Shown here piece by piece: positions 3,771 to 15,338 of a stretch of 64,000 bases of DNA. The stretch is from Auanema rhodensis (lineage: Eukaryota; Animalia; Nematoda): positions 13,206,001 through 13,270,000 of the forward strand of contig OZ059897.1 in assembly GCA_964057225.1 (NCBI GenBank), read 5' to 3'. The notes under the pieces are model-generated. The model was not told the origin of the DNA and did not search any database. It saw only the letters and a list, made by a program, of their open reading frames with translations. Each line of letters opens with the position of its first letter. Positions within the stretch are counted from its first letter, which is position 1. Position numbers and translations under genes: made by a program.

Positions 3771-6700
3771 ATGGTCAGAGACGACGATGATATTGATGCT
3801 GAAGAAGCTGGCAAAACTGCCCATATGCTTCAAGTTAAGCAGCTCATTTCCAAAAATGTTATAACCAAAAGAAAGGTATGTGATAGTTCTTATTTTATAT
3901 TTTTTCTAATTTCATAAGCTTGCTTGGGTCACTTTTTAATTAATTTTAATTGTTATTTTATACTTATTTTCTTTTACTATAATAAAAGCCATATGTTAAA
4001 GTCGCGCAAATTCTAATGTTTTGATTAAAAACATATGTTTCTAAGCTAAGAAACTCGGAAACGAATCATTTTATTTTTCTTGCTTTCTAATTATCTTTGA
4101 ATCAGCCAACGGAAAAGTTCATGCAATTTTGTTTCTTGTACCACTTATAATGAATCATTCGATCAGCGCAGAACCTGCACATTCATTTTTTTATTTTTTT
4201 TGTCTTAACAGTACATGTGTTGTTTTATTTCTATATATGTATTTTATATTATGCTACATATTCCGAGCATGTTTTGGTTTCATTCCCCTAGTATCAAATC
4301 ATCACACGATTTGTTCACCTTTTGCATTTCTTTTTCTTTAACTTAAGCATCTCGAATACAATATTTTGAATTTAATTTCTCTTGTTTGCCAACGATTTCT
4401 ACAGTGAATTAATTTGTTCTGTTTGTTTTTAAGCATTACTAACATATTTAAAAGTATACTTCTCAATTTTCCCCGTTCGTTATCATTTGGCAAGAAATTG
4501 TTCTTCATTTTTTTTTAATAATTCAAAATATTTTTGAATTTTGATTGTCCTTGCTTACTTATGACGTTCTTACCCTGTTTTCGTTTTCAAAAAAATGTGT
4601 TCACACCTTTTTCTTTTCTGTTCATTCATTGGTGACTAAGGTTAGATCGAATTTTCGCTGAGCACAGCTGAGATTCTGGAAAAATTGTCGTCGTTTGCGT
4701 GGTTTTCAAGTCTTCTGTACGTAAGCTGAACGGTCAACAGGGCGATTAGCTTAACAAAGCTGCTTTTTCTTGTCTAAATTGCGCGTTTCTATCATCTGGG
4801 CATGTATGAAGACAAAGTTTCAAAAGACTAGTCGATAATTACATAATCTTTATAGTTAAAGTCGTCATTTACCAAGTTATAGTAATTGTGCATTTTGTAG
4901 GAACAGCTACATCGTTGGCAATCCAGTGAAATGAATGGCGAATCAGTATTACGACGGAAGAAACCTCGAGTACAATTTCAGGTCGGATTTCTTCTGTTAG
5001 GATGAAATTTTCATATACTTTACTCTTCAGGATAGCGATATATTTTTAAGTGCTTGTATGTCTGGAGATGAGGAAGAAGTAGAAGATTTGTTAGAAAAGG
5101 GAGCCGATATTAACACAAGTACAATTGACGGTCTTACAGCTCTACATCAGGTTTTTTTGCTTATGTTTCGTTTCATTATTGCTTTATTTCAGTCGGTGAT
5201 AGATAGTAAACCAGAGATGGTTCGATTTTTATGTGAGAAAGGAGCTGATGTCAATGCTCAGGATAACGAAGGCTGGACACCTCTTCATGCTGCTGCGTGT
5301 TGTGGTAACTTAGCTATAGTTAAGTACTTATGCCAGAACGGAACTGATATGGCCATTATTAATAGGTTTCCTTATATCACATGATATTTTATAAATAAAT
5401 CATTTTTTAGCGACAAAGAGCTAGCATTAGATCTTGCCGATGACGAAGCTTGTCGTGAATACTTAGATTACGAGTATAAGCGACAATCTATTGATCCGGA
5501 TCAGTGTAGGAATGTTGAGCTAACAACGATGATGAGAGATGCTCAGAAATGGTTGAAAGAAGGCAAATACAAGTAATATTGGATGTTATTTCTAATTTTC
5601 TAATTTGCTTCTAATTCAGTGATTCACCTCATGCTCAAACTGGTGCTTCGGCTTTACATGTAGCAGCAGCAAAAGGTTATATTCAGCTTCTTGAACTACT
5701 ACTCTCTGCTGGTGGAAATGCTAAATGCCAAGACAAGGTTAGTCTTAATTTCCGCCTTAAACTTAATTTCCTATTCAGGATGGCTGGACTCCTCTTCACG
5801 CTGCTGCTCATTGGGCTGAGCGTGACGCATGTAAGATTTTAATCGAAAATGGCGGTAGCATACATGATTTAAGTTTTGCGGTATGGTAGAAAATATGTGT
5901 TTATATGACAAATGATATAATTCAGGGTCAAAATGTGTTAACTGTTGCTGATAGTAAGATTGTTGAGTACTTAGAAGATTTAGAACGAACTGTTGAAAAG
6001 AAACGTGTATCATCTTCACCGTCTACTACAAGTGTACTGCAGGTTCATTGATTCTATGAGTTTTATCTTTATATACTTATGTTTAGGAGAAGAATGTTCG
6101 CGTAGGTGATGACCAAAACGGAAATGAATATAAACGCGAATATCGGGAAGCAAGCAGTGAAAATGAATCTGTTTATACTGTTCCCAAGTGCCCAAAACTA
6201 TCTGAAAAGTCGCCCTCTGTGGAATCGCAGTCTTCACAGGATTCCCGGAGGTCAGTAGAAGAAGAAATATCTCCCGAGAAGTCAGAGAGTGAAGCTACAT
6301 GCAGCGCTAGGTTTGTTGCAAATACTATCTTATTTCAAAACGTATATTTATATAAATTTTTAGGTCTTCCGAGGAACCTTCTATCTCAGGATCTGAAAGA
6401 TCCACTTCATTAGATAAACCATTGCAAAATCATCGGTCATTTGCTTCAAGTAATAGCACAATTTCTAGTTCTCCTACAACTGCTAGTTCCATAAGTGCTG
6501 TATCAACTAGGACATCTGTAATATTCTTTTTTATCAAAATAATTAAATAGTTTTCTCTTTTTAGTCTAATAGTTCTTCATTGCAAAGTGGAGATCAACAT
6601 ATTGCTTGTACAGTACCTATTCCTAGGCCATTACAACAACCAAACTCATGGATTAACCGAGGAGTTCAACTCGTTACCAGGTAAATTTTTTTGAAAGATT

Positions 6701-9700
6701 TTGTATTATTTCTTTCTAGTTTGTCTACTTTAAATTATATGCTTCTCTTCATTTAAGAAAATTTATTTTAAGATTTCAATAGTATATATATATATTCTTG
6801 TGCACTGAGATATAGAGTTCTTGAACTTTTAATACATTATAATATAGATCAATGCTCGTGATTTCAAAAAAAAAACACAAATATTTTTGTAATAAGCTTT
6901 GTGAAGAAAATAGCACATAATTTTTGAACTTTGTCATTGGTGCTTGTGCGATTAATTGAATGTTCGATGAAATTCCTGATACTTTTACAGGTCGGCGAGT
7001 ACATCTTCCGGCTCAGGAAGCAGAAACTCTGAGGGATCTGTGTCTGCTTCATCTCAAGCATCTGTTAGTTCTCCTAGTGCATCAGGATCTCCTGCCCCTG
7101 CCTATTCTGCTAACAGCAGCCTTCTACATAATAAAACATTGTAAGTTTTTTATATTATCATGTTTGGAATGTTTTTTTCTGTTATTTTGCGTTAGTGCAT
7201 GCTCTATGTTTGTTCAGTTTCGAGCCTTCTGTGCAACGTTCTACGTCTATTCCTTCTAATTTGCCTTGGCTGTCGTTATGTCGTAGTGGTAGCAATTCAC
7301 AAGTTCGTTCACCTGCTGATGGCCCAGCTTTTCCTCAATACTTGAGTCAAAACCGGGTATCAGCATTCCGACCTCCTATAAAGGTGTCAAACTCACCACC
7401 TGTTTCGGAATTACCACGCGGCTTACAGCCACAACATTTAAGTCCCCAAAAGATGAGGTCCGTGTTTCGTTTATGTGATGTGTGTTGAATGCTTTTGTAG
7501 TGTTATGTTATCTTTATCTAGCTAAGTCTTTTTAGACCTTGGTTGTCCAGTACAGTAAATGAAAGTGAAGCTGAACGAAGAACAACTGCTCGCCTTCAAA
7601 GACAAAATAGGCGCTCAACTCAAGGAGTTACAAAGGTATCGTATTACGTTTGGAGTGTTTTTGGAGCTCTAAACATATAATTATTCATTTTATTCATATA
7701 GGAGCAACTGGAAGAAGCTAGTCGGATTGCTTCTGAAGAATCTGCTCGTCGGCGCAATTCAGCTAATACCCATTCTTCGGTGGGCTCCAGCGAAACATCT
7801 CAACGTGACTGTGTAAGTTTCGAGATTATGATTATTTTCTTTCATTATATTGTTCATCTCATCCGGGAAAATTGTTTTGCGGTTCTGCCATGACCTTTTA
7901 TAATTTTAATTGCTGGTCTCGTTCTCTATCCCTTCGACATTTCAAGAAAGAGATAGGAGACGTTCATCATCGCTGTAGGGTGTTCATGATAAACTAGGGA
8001 ACAGAGAGCGAAAGAGTAAAGGGAAAGATTAGGATGACCTAATAATACAGAAATTATTAGAAAATCACAACTAATGACTTACGCGAATTGTGGCGAGAGC
8101 TGTATTTTAATGGATCGGGATGTTGGCAAACATTGTGAAATCTGGGGGTTTATATTATATATGAACAAATCATTATATATTTTCTTAACAACAGTGTAAC
8201 AAATATAAAAATAGCACTCTTAATGAAATAGTTTTATAGTACAGTTTTCATATTATAGATTTTGGCTCGTCTTGCATCTGAAGAACAAGATTCAACTTCA
8301 ATATCCGAAAGCTCCGAACCTCAAACGTCAAGTGTGCGGATATTACCTGATGGCAGCGTTCAAGGTTAGTAGCATGTAAATTAGTCATTCTTCATTTTTC
8401 AATTCTTGAAGACTTGGATCGAAGTAGTTCTGATAGATCCTCACCTCATACAACGAATGCTTCAATCTACTTATATAAAAACTCTTCTAATACATCCACA
8501 AGTACAACTCCATCATCTACTGGTTTACGACGTAAAAGCCAGGTTAGTGGCCTGCTATTTTCTCATCTTTTATCTTATTTCAAGTTTCCTTTACTTTTTT
8601 TTTTACTTTTATCTGAATATTAAACATTTTTTTGCCTTGCATATGTTTTGCTAGTTTTTAGTTTTTGTGTTGCTCAGTTTAATTTTTGAAAGCTATTCTT
8701 ATTTTGGGCTTTTGTTTTTGTTTGTTTTCGAGTTTTGCTCTTAACAGGGTGTCCCGTTGTCACGCTCCAATCGCCGTGGTACTGGCCCGGTTCTGCCTGA
8801 GGATTTGCATGCTGCTGTTGCCAGTGTCAGTATTAGTTCTCCACCGGATTCTGTTCCTGCACCTTCAACTCCAACATCAGCTCCACCGCCGCCTCTTCGT
8901 TATGCAACAAATAACGGAGCTTCCTTTAGTAGACCTATAATAACTCCGTTTTCAAGAACTGATGCTCGTTTGAATCCTTCGAGCATTTACTCTTCGACAA
9001 CTTCATCATCAAATGATAGAACAATAGGGCAAGAGTTGAAATCATCGTCGGTACCTCCATCTACTTCAACGGTATGTCCTTTAGCTTGTGGTTTTTGATG
9101 TTTGCATGTTTATTGTTTCTCTATGTTTGATTTGTTTCTTTTTTACTGCTTTTTTTGATTTCGACTTAGTTTTAACTCAATACCTAATCCTGTTTATATT
9201 CTTGCAAGTTCACCCTATGTGATGATTCTAGGTTGCTTTCTGTCTTTTGATTGCTCTTTAACTTCTTTGCTCTCTGGCCGTTAGCACAATGGCGCCGAGA
9301 ACAAAATTTCTTTGTCCACTTATCTTTTTTCGTTAGAGTATCCCTCATGTCATCTTCATCAACCTCTTCTTTTTGTTAGAGCAGGTAGATTTTTGCAGTC
9401 AACGCCCATCTATCTTTTCATATCTTTAAACTAAACTCACTTCATTCTTATGTATTCACCTTATTCTACTAGTTATTCATCTTCGAGATCTAGCTCTCGG
9501 CTACATTGTTCTCCACGTCGTTTAGGCGACGTGAGATCGAAATCCGTAGGCCCCCCATCCGTATTCAGAAGTACCAGTTCTGATAGATTTTTTAGAAGTT
9601 CAAATGCTTTAATTGATTCTAAATTAGGTGTAAGTATCACAAGTCTTCTCTATGCTATTTAATTAACAGCATGAATATCTTTCATTTTGTAACTAATATT

Positions 9701-10910
9701 ATAATTTCCACTATTCCTACCTTTCTATGAAACCGAAATATTTCAGAGCATGAGAACAGTTTTAAAAACTAAAGATATGTTTAAATTATTTTTTTAGCCG
9801 AGCAGTATAACAACGTCAGGATTGCGTAGTGCTGTTGTTGCTCCATCGCCAAGTAGCAGGTTCACTTCTAAAGCTACTGTTTCTCCTCTTCATCCGTCAC
9901 CTTCTTCAGCTTTTACAGCTTCTTCCAATGTTTGTATATGTTTTATACACATCCTTAGAATTCTCGGTCAAACGTATGATATTTTTACACTTGAATTTCA
10001 GGCTTACTCATCTCGTCCTTCGGAAACCAACTTAAATTATAAAGCTTTGTATGAAAAAGAGAAGTCTGAATCAGAAAGGCTACGAAGAGAGCTGGAAGAT
10101 ATGAAAAAACTGCAAGATGTATGAGTTTCATATTTATTTTCTATTATTAACATTGTCCTGATTTAGAGCTCTAGTTTATCAGTTACTCGTGCTGGAACTT
10201 CAAGATTCAGAAATGGATCTCCTGCTAGTTCAATACCTCTTAGTAAATCTTCTTCTGGAGCTTCCGTAGATGATAATGAGAGAAGATCATTAGAACGAAA
10301 AATATCCGATCTCGAGTTACAAGTCAAGGTATGCTGATGTTTTTCTAATTGTATTCATCATTATCTACCATCTACGTTTTTTTTGATAAATTATCGAAAA
10401 CATTAAATTTTAGGAGCAGAATGCTCTAGCTTCTGAGAATGCACGTCTTCGCTCGGAGAACGAAGCGTTGGTTCGCGTTTTAGCCAAAATCAGTCGACCG
10501 ATCGCCAACTAATTCTCCTTCTATAAAAGATATTTTCAAAAGTGGGGATTGTATGCGCTTTACTTAACATTTTATTTCTAAAAATCTGTGCCTAACGTGG
10601 GATCCCATTTTCACAAAGTTGTGCTTAACTAAAAAACTTCAACCTAGCTCAGTTATTATAAAAACCCTCGAATCCCGTTTTGATGTCCGCGTTTATTAAC
10701 ATGTCTTTTCCTGTGAGATCGAAATGATTTAAAAAACTAACATTACATGGGCAAATCAAGCTTGTATTTTTCTTGCGCATGCTCCTTTTTACTTTTAAAA
10801 CTCTAATTATAATTTTTTTATAGGCTGTTAACCAACTGCGAATGGAAAATCAACGCTTAAAGGAGGAGAATGGAGCTCTAGTACGTGTGATTTCAAAAAT
10901 GAGAATCTAG
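3771..10910 (+). CDS. mel-11: Myosin phosphatase regulatory subunit MYPT1/PPP1R12 orthologue; ~23 exons, alternative last exons 10414-10512 or 10824-10910
   Basis: MyPhoNE motif RK|EQLHRW across exons 3771-3875/4901-4981, PP1-docking RVQF, ankyrin repeats (DGLTALHQ, EGWTPLHAAACCG, TGASALHVAAAKGY, DGWTPLHAAAHW), inhibitory phosphosite motifs RRSTQGVT (7536-7635) and RRGTGPV (8749-9071), coiled coil NYKALYEKEKSE, ERRSLERKISDLE and terminal zipper ENQRLKEENGALVRVISKM. Confidence 0.95.
9450..9629 (+). CDS. mel-11: Putative internal alternative first exon of mel-11 (60 codons, Ser/Arg-rich)
   Basis: ATG 9450, open to a consensus phase-0 donor GGT|GTAAGT at 9630 that joins in frame to exon 9798; in-frame TAA at 9432; acceptor TTTTGCAG ends at 9398. 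Confidence 0.6.
10414..10512 (+). CDS. mel-11: mel-11 proximal alternative terminal exon (variant leucine zipper)
   Basis: TTTTAG acceptor, phase 0 with donor at 10329; EQNALASENARLRSENEALVRVLAKISRPIAN*, paralogous to the distal last exon. Confidence 0.85.
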   Translation, partial: EQNALASENARLRSENEALVRVLAKISRPIAN

Positions 10911-13900
10911 TCTCTTTTTCCATTTTTTTTTATTCTTCGGTCCCCTTTTTGGACCTTTCATATCCAGAGGCACAAGTCTTGGTTCCATCTGTCGCACGAT
11001 TCCCCACTTTTCTCTGAAACAGAGTTGCTGTTATCATATATATCTTGTGTATGTATCAGTTTTCGTTTTGCTCATTTTACCATCTATGTACATTCGAGTT
11101 GCTTTGCATTTTGATTTGTACATGATTGTCTTCTCTAATCTAGCTATTCTAGATCCAAATTTCGGTGGCCTTATTGATCAGTTCCCAAACTGTGCAATTG
11201 TATAATATTTCACTACCCTTTACTTCTCTTAATTTTTAGGCAGAATATGATATGTAATCACCTTCTCATGTGTTTTCTACTGCCCTCTAGCGACCCTTTT
11301 TACCCTACTCCAGCTCATTTTCTGTTCTTAAACTATATTATATATTACCAAACTGATTAACTATCTGACTGGATAGGTTGATTTTTAAAAAATTTGGATG
11401 TTATCATTGACATATGTTTGCGGCTGTTTTTTCTTTAATGTTATAAGCCATTTACCTTTTTTTCTGGCCGTCTGTTATGTTCATCCCAAGTTCTTCCAAC
11501 CTTCTTCTCCTTTCCGAAATAGCTGAACAATTATCAGATTCTTGGCAGAGTATGTATAATATATATATATAACTATATATAACTATATATATCTAAATGT
11601 GATTTCGGATGTCTTCGCGGATTCTATTGACGATTGAATGTATTATCTTTGTTCTTTCTTTTGACGAATGCTTTTGAAGGTTTTGTCAAGATGAACTCAT
11701 AGCTATATAAAAGTACATATTTGAACACTTCTTATTTGTATGTTCATAATTTCGTTTTCTCCTAATTCTCTAGGTTTATGGCGTAAATGTTGTTTCAATC
11801 GTGATTTGGCTAGTCGTAACGGGGTTAGAATTCAGTTTTGCGATCAACAAGAACAAGTAGGGCTAATAACTTGAATATTCGGAACATAAAAAATACGTTT
11901 GTAAATATAATTGTTCATTCTAAATGTGAAATTCGTAGTTGTGCTTTTTCAAAAAAATGTTTTATTGCGACGAACTTTGAGCCTTATAGGTTATAAATAC
12001 ACGAGATTACTTTCATGAGTCAGCAACATCTTACATCATCTATGTATGTTTGATAATAAAGAACTGATACACAAAAAAAAAGAACTAAATTAGCTATTTC
12101 AGCGCATTTTATTATAGCAACACGGTTATAATAGATCAGTGATCTATTTTGATTTAAATAGAAATTTATTTTATGAATAATAGATCAGATAGTTAACAAA
12201 TTATGAACCATAGTCTGGATTGGAAGACAGCTCATCCTACAGTAACAATGTGTTTTCAATCAATCTTTCTTGACTATTGATAGTCTAACCATCGTTCGCT
12301 ATCAACACATTGCGGAAGAAAGAAAGTTCGGAAGTCCTATGGGTATACGAAATAGCATTTTCTGTGAAGAGATTTCAATGAGTCATGATGAAACAGCTGT
12401 TCTATCACCGGTTGACAACGAGGTCTTTTGTCACTTGTACATCGTATATAAGCCACCATGTATGTATAAACAATAGAATCATGAAATAAGAGCATGATTA
12501 TCCTCTATCGTAGACATATAATATTGACAAGAATTCTCTCATTGCTAAAAATGGTCATTGCTAAGTTTCAGCATGTTGTGCTAAAAGAATAATCTGATTT
12601 TTATGTTTTTTTAAATGTAATTGAAAATGTATTTCAACATATTTCAATATATTTGTTATCATAAATATGTATGTGCTCAGGTATATAAATGAGTTTTTCT
12701 TATTTCTCTATTTGTTCAACTTTTAATGTCTCGTAATAATAATAGGAAAAACATATATTTATTTAAATTCTGATTTTTTATAAATTTTTATTCAAAATAT
12801 TTTAATATCCGTGTTTCAAATATTTGTTTCTTCTCTGAAAAAAAAATATTTTTTTTCCTGAAATCAAATTATAACTAATCAAACAAAAAATTGTATGATT
12901 CAGTTGAAATACAATGTATATTCTAGATATTTATTTTGTATATGTTTTTACATAACTGTATTTTGAACTTATTTTATTTAAAATACAGAAAATATCATTT
13001 TTTTAAAAGTTATATTGAAGCTTATTTATATTTATATCTCTTATCATTTTAGTGGTGAAAGAGATATGTTGAAAAATCCACAATGAAAAATCAATTTTCA
13101 ACCCTTTGTAGAATATAAAATAGCTTTTTTTTGTGAATTGCTAAATAGAAAATAAAAATTATTAACTAACACAGTTATTTATATCTCAAAAATAGTTTTG
13201 CCCTATAAGCATTGCTGTTTCTTTTCAAAACACAGTTTTTGTGTAGCTGATTTTTGATTTTTCTGCATTTACAATACACATGATTTCCATTGATATCAAT
13301 AGACATGTTTGATGATTAAGACTATTTCGAATCCAGAAGCTTCCATCGTCTCTCCATATAAATGGCTCTGCATGAACGAGATGGTTCAGTTTGCTGGAAT
13401 AGGGAAATTCATCTATATGTCATAAAACATATAATTCACTTTTCTGACCTTCAAATTTTCTGAATTAGTCTCTCTACTGTTACTTATTCTCACGCCAATC
13501 ATCTTATTCCTCATATTACCGCATAGCTATTATCCTTACCTTCATTCAATTACTATCAAACAGTGCCTGTTATTCTTTCAAATTGGGGTTAATCCTATAA
13601 CACCGTCAAAGGTTGTTTTCCTAGAATTCGATGAACCTATCTAGAGTACCATTTGACCTAAAATGTACCTTTTCTTGTCTATTAACCGATCAGAACCGCT
13701 TGTTATTGGTAATTATCACGTCTCGAACAAACTACCTACCTGCCCATATACACTTCATTTCTAGCTGTGTCGGCGGGCGGAATGGTTGCATTCACAAGTT
13801 TTCTTTTTTCCAGTATGTTTTAGAGATCATCTGACCTATTTTTGTGTTTCACATAACACGGCAAAGCAACTTTTCAGTATAAAAATGTACTGGAGTGTCT

Positions 13901-14475
13901 GGAAAGAATTTTTTTGTCATATTTTTCGTTCTTTGAATGAAACGTTATTCTCATATTGTTTGTTGATATCTCGTTTTCCAGAAAGTTATGATGAGTCATG
14001 AATCAAAATTTTACTCTGTTCGTATGGTCATTGAGTCATTGAGTCATTCAATCAATAGATCATTTTGCTTCCATTTTTATCTTATTTCTGGCCTTCTGTA
14101 ATAATTCCGGTTATATCCATTCTATTACTATAACTAGTACTTGTTTATTTTCCTGAAATCAATCTGTGAGAATAACCGATCATTTCATTCTTTCTTTCAA
14201 TATTTTCTGGTAAAATTTCGAAATAATTATTTAAAAATAAGGGATTAAACGTTATTGTTGAGATTATTCGATGGGATGATATCATTTTCTCTATTACATC
14301 TCCGAGGTTTTTTGACTATTTCTATTCAATACCTTTTTTATGGTCGACCTAGATTCCTTTTTTTTTTATTTTTCTTCTTCTTTGATAAAGACCAATTCAT
14401 GAAATATGATTTTTGTTTCAGTTTTCGATATGTCTTTCTTTCGTTTATGCTTATTCTAAATATTATAATTCTAGT

Positions 14476-15338
14476 ATGAAGACTATCTGCGTATTGTTGG
14501 CTGTGGTTGCCGTAGCTTTTTCTGCACCTCGTTCTAAGCGTTTCACTGTTGGGACTATTGCTGTGTCAGCTCCAATAGCTGGAGGAAATGTCGGATGTGT
14601 TGTTACCGTAAGTGATACGTTCTAATTTATTTTAAATTATTTGTTTTGTTTAGGCAAATACCTTGTACATCAATGGTTTGAAGCAAAGAGAATTGACCAC
14701 TGAAGAGCAAAGCGAACTTGAGACCTACCAGTCTGCCTTCGGAAAGTACAAAGACGAATTAAAGACTTTGGTTGCCGAGAAGCATAAGGCTCTTCAAGCT
14801 AGAATCAACGGAAAGAAGGGATCTGCTGTTGAATCTGTTTCTTCAGTCGCTACTACCAAGCCTCAACCACCAAAAAGACCATCCTTCTGCCAGGCTAACG
14901 ATACTACCCAATATGTTTTCGATGGATGCATGGTTCAAGGAAACAAGGTCTACGTCGGACGTGACTATGCTCGTGATCTGACTTCAGAAGAGGTAGAGCA
15001 ACTCAAGGTTTATGACGAGAAGCAAACTGCCTACAGTAAGCAAGTTCAAGAGCACGTCAAGAAGGTTTAAACATAATATAGTAACGTAATATTTAATCCA
15101 TGACGTTTCCAGCAAGTAAGCGAAATCCTCGGAACATCCGAAATCTTCTCTGCTTTATTGGGCGAAATTTCTGGAAGAGACCAAGATGCTGAACCAGAGG
15201 TTAGAAATGACCTGAAAACAAATTATATTCAAAGTTGTTTAGGCTACCACTCGCTCTTCATCTGCTGCTACCACTGACGGTTCTAACATCTTACTTGAAG
15301 CCCCAGTTGCTCCAAACTTCTGTACAGCTATCCTTTAA
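14476..15338 (+). CDS. Secreted aspartyl protease inhibitor (Pepsin-I3 / Ov33 / API family), 4 exons
   Basis: Signal peptide MKTICVLLAVVAVAFSA, RSKR site, two repeats GCVVTANTLYINGLKQRELT..E and GCMVQGNKVYVGRDYARDLTSEE, PPKRPSFC and C-terminal PVAPNFCTAIL*; biased codon use suggests high expression. Confidence 0.92.

What the first reader, a model, noticed from the sequence alone, without database searches (positions are those of the whole stretch)
9391..10910. Hidden internal start in mel-11 predicting an M20/M21-like small subunit
Seen: inside the 9072-9797 intron is a 60-codon ATG-led frame (9450-9629) ending at a perfect phase-0 GTAAGT donor. The upstream acceptor (9398) runs into an in-frame TAA at 9432, so it cannot be a simple internal coding exon. 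Spliced to 9798-9929, 10002-10118, 10167-10328 and either last exon it gives 225 or 229 aa with only Ser-rich, coiled-coil and zipper parts, no ankyrins or RVxF. Known: the vertebrate holoenzyme has an M20/M21 subunit made from the 3' part of a MYPT gene. Inference: a nematode equivalent from an intronic promoter with SL trans-splicing at 9398; cis-splicing to 9398 would instead give a zipper-less or NMD isoform.
Basis: partly seen in the sequence, partly recalled or inferred. Interest (0 to 1): 0.75.

Follow-up and report, generated by a model that had tools for sequence, protein, structure and literature searches.

The report
Intron-born short myosin-phosphatase transcript in nematode
Inside the largest intron of a nematode myosin-phosphatase targeting gene (MYPT/mel-11) lies a transcribed, coding-looking extra first exon. 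It could make a 25-kDa tail-only protein like the vertebrate M20/M21 small subunit, but neither its start site nor the protein has been shown.

Summary
ATG 9450 opens 60 codons that end in phase 0 at GTAAGT (9630). An in-frame TAA at 9432 closes the frame to anything spliced in from upstream.

RNA contigs from four runs of one study show that this block is transcribed, while the gene's other long introns have no coverage. One contig runs 9337-9629 plus 30 further letters, most likely 9798-9827. Another ends exactly at 9629. Three runs have no coverage of 9072-9256, and the upstream exon's contig shows no branch at 9071. This fits a transcript that starts inside the intron, not a cassette exon.

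The frame uses this gene's codons far better than composition-matched open frames do.

The proposed trans-splice or cis acceptor at 9398 is not supported, because every contig runs straight through it. No spliced-leader letters were seen. In two runs the 9629 donor is read through unspliced. The leader carries one or two short upstream ORFs.

The 60-residue N-terminus has no detectable relative. No sister-species locus could be fetched, so conservation is untested.

Verdict: observation confirmed, interpretation partly supported. The best reading (about 0.45) is an alternative first exon for a 225/229-residue M20-like isoform. The scan had not noted this exon on other DNA.

The parts
9072..9797 (+). 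Host intron of the MYPT/mel-11-like gene. At 726 nt it is the largest intron in the part of the gene covered.
   Evidence: Joint 9071>9798 (GT..AG) in all four runs. Intron sizes are listed. No repeat copies elsewhere in the window.
9257..9336 (+). Transcribed stretch upstream of the block. It is either a leader or the zone where the internal transcript starts. It contains uATG 9289 (15 codons).
   Evidence: The X2 contig covers 9257-9754 and the X1 contig 9042-9629. X2, X3 and X4 have no coverage of 9072-9256. uATG.
9337..9629 (+). Transcribed block, the candidate alternative first exon (293 nt). The AG at 9335-9336 just before it may be a coincidence.
   Evidence: X4 contig of 323 nt = 9337-9629 plus 30 more letters laid elsewhere in the stretch, with no extra letters on its left. 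The X1 contig ends exactly at 9629. GC is 0.39 here against 0.25-0.34 in the flanking intron.
9347..9379 (+). Upstream ORF of 10 codons plus stop, in the leader if the transcript starts at or before 9337.
9397..9398 (+). No RNA support.
   Evidence: The contigs of X1, X2 and X4 run through 9398/9399 colinear with the genome. The upstream exon's contig in X2-X4 shows no branch at 9071.
9432..9434 (+). In-frame TAA that closes the 9450 frame to any reading entering from upstream.
9450..9629 (+). ATG-led 60-codon frame encoding a Ser/Arg-rich, probably disordered N-terminus.
   Evidence: No Pfam, PDB or protein-database relative.
9630..9635 (+). GTAAGT donor in phase 0. It is used in X4 and probably X1, and read through unspliced in X2 and X3.
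   Evidence: contig ends and the 30-letter continuation. Site string.
9798..9929 (+). Shared exon, 44 codons, Ser/Pro-rich.
   Evidence: Joints. Phases.
10002..10118 (+). Shared exon, 39 codons. Start of the PRKG1_interact coiled coil.
10167..10328 (+). Shared exon, 54 codons. Middle of PRKG1_interact.
10414..10512 (+). Last exon a (leucine-zipper variant, 32 codons plus TAA). It is used through an alternative acceptor, and its transcript runs on into exon b.
   Evidence: Joint 10328>10414 in four runs. The X1 contig is contiguous over 10412-10851. Pfam.
10824..10910 (+). Last exon b (leucine-zipper variant, 28 codons plus TAG).
   Evidence: Joint 10328>10824 in four runs. PRKG1_interact E = 3e-11.

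Best explanation
The 726-nt intron of this MYPT/mel-11-like gene contains an internal transcription unit. Transcription begins inside the intron, somewhere between about 9257 and 9337. It runs through a 5' leader into a private first coding exon (ATG 9450 to 9629). It is then spliced, not always efficiently, from the GTAAGT donor at 9630 to the ordinary acceptor at 9798.

Translation from ATG 9450 would give a 225- or 229-residue protein of about 25 kDa. This protein has a unique Ser/Arg-rich 60-residue head followed by the Ser-rich linker, coiled coil and one of two leucine zippers of MYPT. It lacks the ankyrin repeats, the PP1-binding part and both Rho-kinase inhibitory sites.

By analogy with vertebrate M20/M21, such a protein would pair through its coiled coil and zipper with full-length MYPT or its zipper partners, and so modulate the phosphatase.

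Shown: transcription of the block, absence of an upstream junction in the contigs, coding-like codon usage, and the exon phases.
Probable: use of the 9629 donor.
Inferred: the start site, translation and function.
For: RNA contigs:
- The four runs are spliced RNA, since all 15 listed joints are GT..AG.
- The other long introns (6681-6990, 7813-8258, 8543-8747) have zero coverage in all runs. In contrast, 9257-9754 is covered at roughly 9-12% of the depth of the downstream exons.
- The X4 contig is 9337-9629 plus 30 letters that are laid on the stretch. Depth bookkeeping excludes 10002-10031 as their place. The contig has no letters left of 9337.
- The upstream exon's contig in X2-X4 runs 8518-9071 plus 30 letters of 9798, so there is no branch at 9071.
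- The X1 contig ends exactly at 9629.
- X2, X3 and X4 have no coverage of 9072-9256.

Intrinsic evidence:
- the codon log-odds is +0.42 in the ATG frame only. It lies within the range of real exon windows (minimum 0.38), above every intron window (maximum -0.15), above all 3953 shuffle-derived open frames, and in the top 4% of the window's 203 open frames.
- an ATG frame ending in phase at GTRAGT has P about 0.001.
- all downstream exons are phase 0.
- PRKG1_interact matches in the tail exons.

Literature: M20/M21 comes from an internal start in PPP1R12B (PMC4552530, PMC13755552).
Against: - The evidence is from assembled contigs of a single study. There are no raw reads, no strand information and no mapped 5' ends.
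- In X2 and X3 the contigs read through the donor unspliced, to 9754 and 9746.
- In X1 the block is contiguous with the upstream exon, which looks like intron retention.
- No spliced leader was seen, although most nematode mRNAs carry one.
- The leader holds one or two short uORFs, and the ATG context (cttATGt) is poor.
- The 60-residue head has no relative among 1.84 billion representative proteins. No sister-species DNA could be fetched, so conservation is untested.
Confidence: 0.45

Rival explanations
1. The intron does start a transcript, but that transcript is not a functional mRNA. It would be promoter- or enhancer-associated RNA, or a poorly spliced by-product, and the 60-codon frame is not translated into a stable protein.
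For: - The X2 and X3 contigs read through the 9629 donor unspliced. Left unspliced, the frame ends after 70 codons at TAA 9660.
- Depth is low, about 6-12 against 64-133 for the shared exons.
- The leader holds uORFs and the start context is weak.
- No homologue of the peptide was found.
Against: - The frame-specific codon usage is hard to obtain by chance.
- The exact phase match of ATG frame, donor and downstream exons has P about 0.001.
- The spliced form is present in at least X4.
Confidence: 0.25
2. This is partial intron retention, or an alternative distal donor. Exon 8748-9071 reads on to 9629 and then splices to 9798. The main frame stops at TGA 9096, giving a zipper-less truncated MYPT or an NMD target. 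The 9450 frame is incidental.
For: The X1 contig is colinear from 9042, inside the exon, to 9629 and ends exactly at the donor. X1 shows a branch at 9071. The main frame closes at 9096-9098.
Against: - X2, X3 and X4 have no coverage of 9072-9256 although 9337-9629 is covered at depth 6-10.
- Their upstream-exon contigs show no branch at 9071.
- This reading does not explain the coding-like codon usage.
Confidence: 0.2
3. It is a cis-spliced poison cassette exon, 9071>9337 or 9071>9399 and then 9629>9798. It would bring in a stop at 9427 or 9432 and regulate the MYPT level through NMD.
For: AG dinucleotides with pyrimidine tracts sit just before 9337 and 9399. The X4 contig begins exactly at 9337. 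The same gene has another low-inclusion cassette exon at 7218-7457.
Against: - The X4 contig carries no 30-letter overhang from 9042-9071 on its left, although it carries one on its right.
- The upstream-exon contigs of X2-X4 have a single continuation, into 9798.
- No contig breaks at 9399.
Confidence: 0.07

Closest known systems
[quoted passage not shown]
   Same: - A short mRNA from inside a MYPT gene that encodes only the C-terminal part, with coiled coil and (in some forms) a leucine zipper, and without ankyrins or a PP1 site (PMC4552530, PMC13755552).
- Variants with different C-terminal ends exist in both.
- Similar size class: about 25 kDa here against 20-21 kDa.
   Different: - Here the host is the single nematode MYPT-type gene seen in this window, not a muscle paralogue.
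- The head is a private 60-residue exon with no detectable similarity to anything.
- The start site, the protein and binding to MYPT are all unshown.
- No M20 has been reported in Drosophila (PMC3723691), and I found no report for nematodes.
Nematode two-promoter genes with an internal promoter in a long intron (general C. elegans pattern; from my own knowledge)
   Same: The longest intron holds the extra start, and the short isoform shares all downstream exons.
   Different: Such internal transcripts are usually SL1 trans-spliced at the next acceptor. Here the contigs show no leader, and the first exon has its own donor.
Vertebrate MYPT1 LZ+/LZ- and cassette-exon isoforms (PPP1R12A E13, E14, E22, E24; PMC9367544)
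   Same: The same gene here also has cassette exons and alternative zipper ends.
   Different: Those are cis-splicing variants of the full-length protein. The feature studied here cannot be read from upstream because of the TAA at 9432.

Membership tests
MYPT / PPP1R12 (host gene) | N-terminal ankyrin repeats | tested here: met
   Ank, Ank_2 and Ank_4 hits in 5058-5360, E down to 1e-15.
MYPT / PPP1R12 (host gene) | Central inhibitory Rho-kinase site motif (RRSTQGVT) | tested here: met
   Exon 7536-7635 encodes ...RQNRRSTQGVTK. Identifying the motif rests on my own knowledge.
MYPT / PPP1R12 (host gene) | C-terminal PRKG1-interacting coiled coil and leucine zipper | tested here: met
   PF15898 pieces in 10002-10118, 10167-10328, 10414-10509 and 10824-10907. 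The last one is above the gathering score.
MYPT / PPP1R12 (host gene) | RVxF (KVKF) PP1-binding motif near the N-terminus | tested here: inconclusive
   No [RK][VI]K[FW] in the forward frames of 3800-5200. The first exons of the gene were not mapped.
M20/M21 small subunit | mRNA starts at an internal promoter within a MYPT gene | tested here: inconclusive
   The contigs begin inside the intron (9337, 9257, 9450). No upstream junction is seen, and 9072-9256 is uncovered in three runs. Contigs cannot show a true 5' end.
M20/M21 small subunit | Protein is the C-terminal MYPT part only (coiled coil with or without zipper), about 20 kDa, no ankyrins, no RVxF | tested here: met
   On the exon model: 225/229 residues, about 24.7/24.9 kDa, no Ank hit and no RVxF-like motif.
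M20/M21 small subunit | Sequence relationship of the isoform-specific part to vertebrate M20 | tested here: not met
   The 60-residue head has no significant relative in the word-index search, in 1.84 billion representatives, or in the PDB.
M20/M21 small subunit | The protein exists and binds the C-terminal region of MYPT in the holoenzyme | not testable with these tools
   Needs proteomics, tagging and co-precipitation.

The most novel reading that the evidence does not exclude
A nematode MYPT gene makes, from a promoter inside its largest intron, a 25-kDa zipper-bearing tail protein that acts as the missing invertebrate counterpart of the M20/M21 small subunit. In that case the 'small subunit nested in a targeting-subunit gene' design would be either ancient or invented twice.
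Probability: 0.3. Interest if true: 0.7.

Novelty: new variant of a known kind. Interest (0 to 1): 0.5.

Why it matters
The third subunit of myosin phosphatase (M20/M21) has an unclear role and is regarded as a vertebrate feature. None has been identified in Drosophila (PMC3723691).

A genetically tractable nematode version could be removed with a single start-codon or exon edit, leaving full-length MYPT intact. That would make the function of the small subunit directly testable in embryo elongation, ovulation and cytokinesis.

If the transcript is instead untranslated, it still marks an internal promoter or regulated intron in a key contractility gene.

Tried and rejected
1. Protein searches with the 60-residue head:
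- The word-index search found no candidate.
- The exhaustive phmmer search gave two hits, both spurious: a repeat in a sugar-transporter-like protein and a Pfam-less 1863-residue protein.

2. Reaching a sister-species locus:
- The constitutive exon 8757-9071 found nothing.
- The neighbouring gene 14663-15067 found only a 1120-nt ENA contig.

3. The start-site motif noted elsewhere in this genome (TRCAACCG) has no copy in 9072-9450.

4. Rfam found nothing in the window.

5. The PDB gave nothing for the head, and only a marginal PAR-4 zipper match for last exon b.

6. Repeat or transposon origin of the intron is rejected, because it has no copies in the window.

7. An in-frame cassette reading is rejected. 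The TAA at 9432 blocks every acceptor upstream. The AGs inside the frame (9472, 9487, 9493) would need an upstream exon ending in phase 2, whereas 9071 ends in phase 0.

8. A second, stronger internal start at 9798 was considered, because the shared exons are 2.2-2.5 times deeper than exon 8748-9071 in X2-X4. Depth bookkeeping fits skipping of that exon instead, so the idea was dropped.

9. Papers on short mel-11 isoforms: none found. Dippold and Fisher 2014 is not held.
Full report
**What is there.**
- The window carries a MYPT/mel-11-type gene on the + strand. It has ankyrin repeats at 5058-5360 and PRKG1_interact pieces in the last exons. Exon 7536-7635 encodes the RRSTQGVT inhibitory-site motif.
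- Earlier notes of the scan describe the genome as an Auanema-type nematode. I did not verify this.
- Reading from 9399 in the phase left by exon 8748-9071 (which ends in phase 0) gives an in-frame TAA at 9432.
- That stop also means no acceptor upstream of 9435 can bring the main reading frame into the 9450 frame.
- The AGs inside the frame sit at codon position 2-3 and do not fit the phase-0 end at 9071.
- The frame can therefore only be used from its own ATG.

**Is it more than chance?**
- An open frame of this length is not remarkable in this T-rich intron (P = 0.55 in Markov shuffles).
- An ATG-led frame of 60 or more codons that ends in phase at GTRAGT occurred in only 0.1% of shuffles.
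- I trained codon log-odds on this gene's RNA-confirmed exons against its introns. The score is +0.42 in the ATG frame and -0.59 and -0.98 in the other two.
- Real exon windows score 0.87 +/- 0.17 (minimum 0.38). Intron windows never exceed -0.15.
- None of 3953 open frames from intron-composition shuffles reaches the observed score. Only 0.2% of open frames from shuffles with the block's own composition reach it.
- The frame ranks in the top 4% of all 203 open frames of 60 or more codons in the window.
- The training set is small (about 710 codons) and Ser-rich, so this is suggestive rather than proof.
- For this bookkeeping I concatenated the constitutive exons inside local scripts, only to count frames and codons. 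Nothing joined was printed, stored or searched.

**RNA evidence.**
One search found four runs from one study, kept as Logan contigs and labelled 'RNA?'. Laid on 5600-11500 they show 15 GT..AG joints, so they are spliced RNA.
- The main joint 9071>9798 is present in all four runs.
- The other long introns have zero coverage in every run. The 9072-9797 intron does not:
  - X1: a 588-nt contig covers 9042-9629 and ends exactly at 9629.
  - X2: a contig covers 9257-9754.
  - X3: a contig covers 9450-9746.
  - X4: a 323-nt contig covers 9337-9629 with 30 more letters laid elsewhere on the stretch.
- The tool did not print five of the joints, so I infer rather than see that those 30 letters are 9798-9827.
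  - It is the usual k-1 overhang at a merge point.
  - The bin sums rule out 10002-10031.
  - The bin holding 9798-9827 has room for them.
- The X4 contig has no overhang on its left. In X2-X4 the contig of exon 8748-9071 continues only into 9798.
- A cis-spliced cassette (9071>9337 or 9071>9399) would have left a branch at 9071 and a 30-letter left overhang.
- No contig breaks at 9398/9399, and no spliced-leader letters appear as loose ends.
- X2, X3 and X4 have no coverage of 9072-9256.
- The simplest reading is a transcript that begins inside the intron, upstream of 9337 and perhaps near 9257. It splices from 9629 to 9798 in X4 and probably X1, and is still unspliced across 9630-9754 in X2 and X3.
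- In X1 the block is contiguous with the upstream exon, so some read-through or retention also exists.
- The block's contig depth is about 9-12% of that of the shared downstream exons in all four runs. The tool warns that contig depth is a poor measure.

**What it would encode.**
- Exon by exon, the model is 60 + 44 + 39 + 54 + 32 or 28 residues, giving 229 or 225 residues (about 24.9 or 24.7 kDa). It has no ankyrin hit and no RVxF-like motif.
- The head is Ser/Arg-rich and probably disordered. It matches nothing in Pfam, the PDB, the word-index protein search or 1.84 billion representative proteins. The two hits there are repeat artefacts.
- A constitutive Ser-rich exon of the same gene also finds nothing, so this blank is weak evidence.
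- The leader would contain a 10-codon uORF (9347), and a 15-codon one (9289) if the transcript starts that far up. The ATG context is poor.

**Comparison with what is known.**
- In vertebrates the M20/M21 small subunit comes from an internal start site or alternative promoter in PPP1R12B. It carries a C-terminal zipper in some forms and binds the C-terminal region of MYPT1. Its role is still unclear (PMC4552530, PMC13755552).
- No M20 has been identified in Drosophila (PMC3723691). I found no paper on a short mel-11 isoform. WormBase isoform tables could not be consulted.
- The feature therefore works like M20/M21 in gene architecture and domain content. Membership is not established: the head is unrelated, and the start site, the protein and binding are untested.

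**Verdict.**
An intron-born, partly spliced, coding-looking transcript is real. The trans-splice or cis acceptor at 9398 is not supported. The M20-like protein remains a hypothesis.
- My odds are:
  - 0.45 for a protein-coding alternative first exon.
  - 0.25 for an untranslated internal transcript.
  - 0.20 for retention or an alternative donor from the upstream exon.
  - 0.07 for a poison cassette.
- All the RNA evidence comes from contigs of one study.
- The joined spliced model was neither searched nor folded.

Noticed in passing
window 7218-7457: An in-frame 240-nt cassette exon (80 Ser/Pro-rich codons) sits inside the 7141-7535 intron. Separate 300-nt contigs with overhangs on both sides are present in three runs (a shorter 169-nt contig in X3), at about 8-14 depth against 26-100 for the skipping joint.
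   Followed up: partly
window 8748-9071: This 324-nt phase-0 exon carries an RRGTGPV motif that resembles the second Rho-kinase site. It appears to be skipped in part of the transcripts of X2-X4 but not X1. Its contig starts exactly 30 letters before the 8542 junction. The bin sums fit a 60-nt 8542>9798 junction contig at depth about 36, 18 and 36. The joint itself was not printed.
   Followed up: partly
window 10414-10910: Both leucine-zipper last exons are used. The a:b ratio is about 1:1 in X2-X4 but about 1:11 in X1. Exon a is reached through an alternative acceptor, and its transcript runs on colinearly into exon b (contig 10412-10851), so the two forms probably share one 3' end.
   Followed up: partly
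window 10852-11500: No contig is laid beyond 10851 in any run, although the stop codon of exon b is at 10908-10910. The tool says a filter can leave records out, so the 3' end of the gene could not be seen.
   Followed up: no
window 14413-15070: A neighbouring + strand gene has a signal-peptide-like first exon. Its 135-codon ORF's only database relative (60% identity, 104 aa, on an ENA contig of 1120 nt) carries PF06394.
   Followed up: no
window 9737-9933 (run X4): About 2000 depth-letters remain in this bin after subtracting all the contigs I could account for. Their source is unexplained. It could be a split of the exon contig or a further junction.
   Followed up: no
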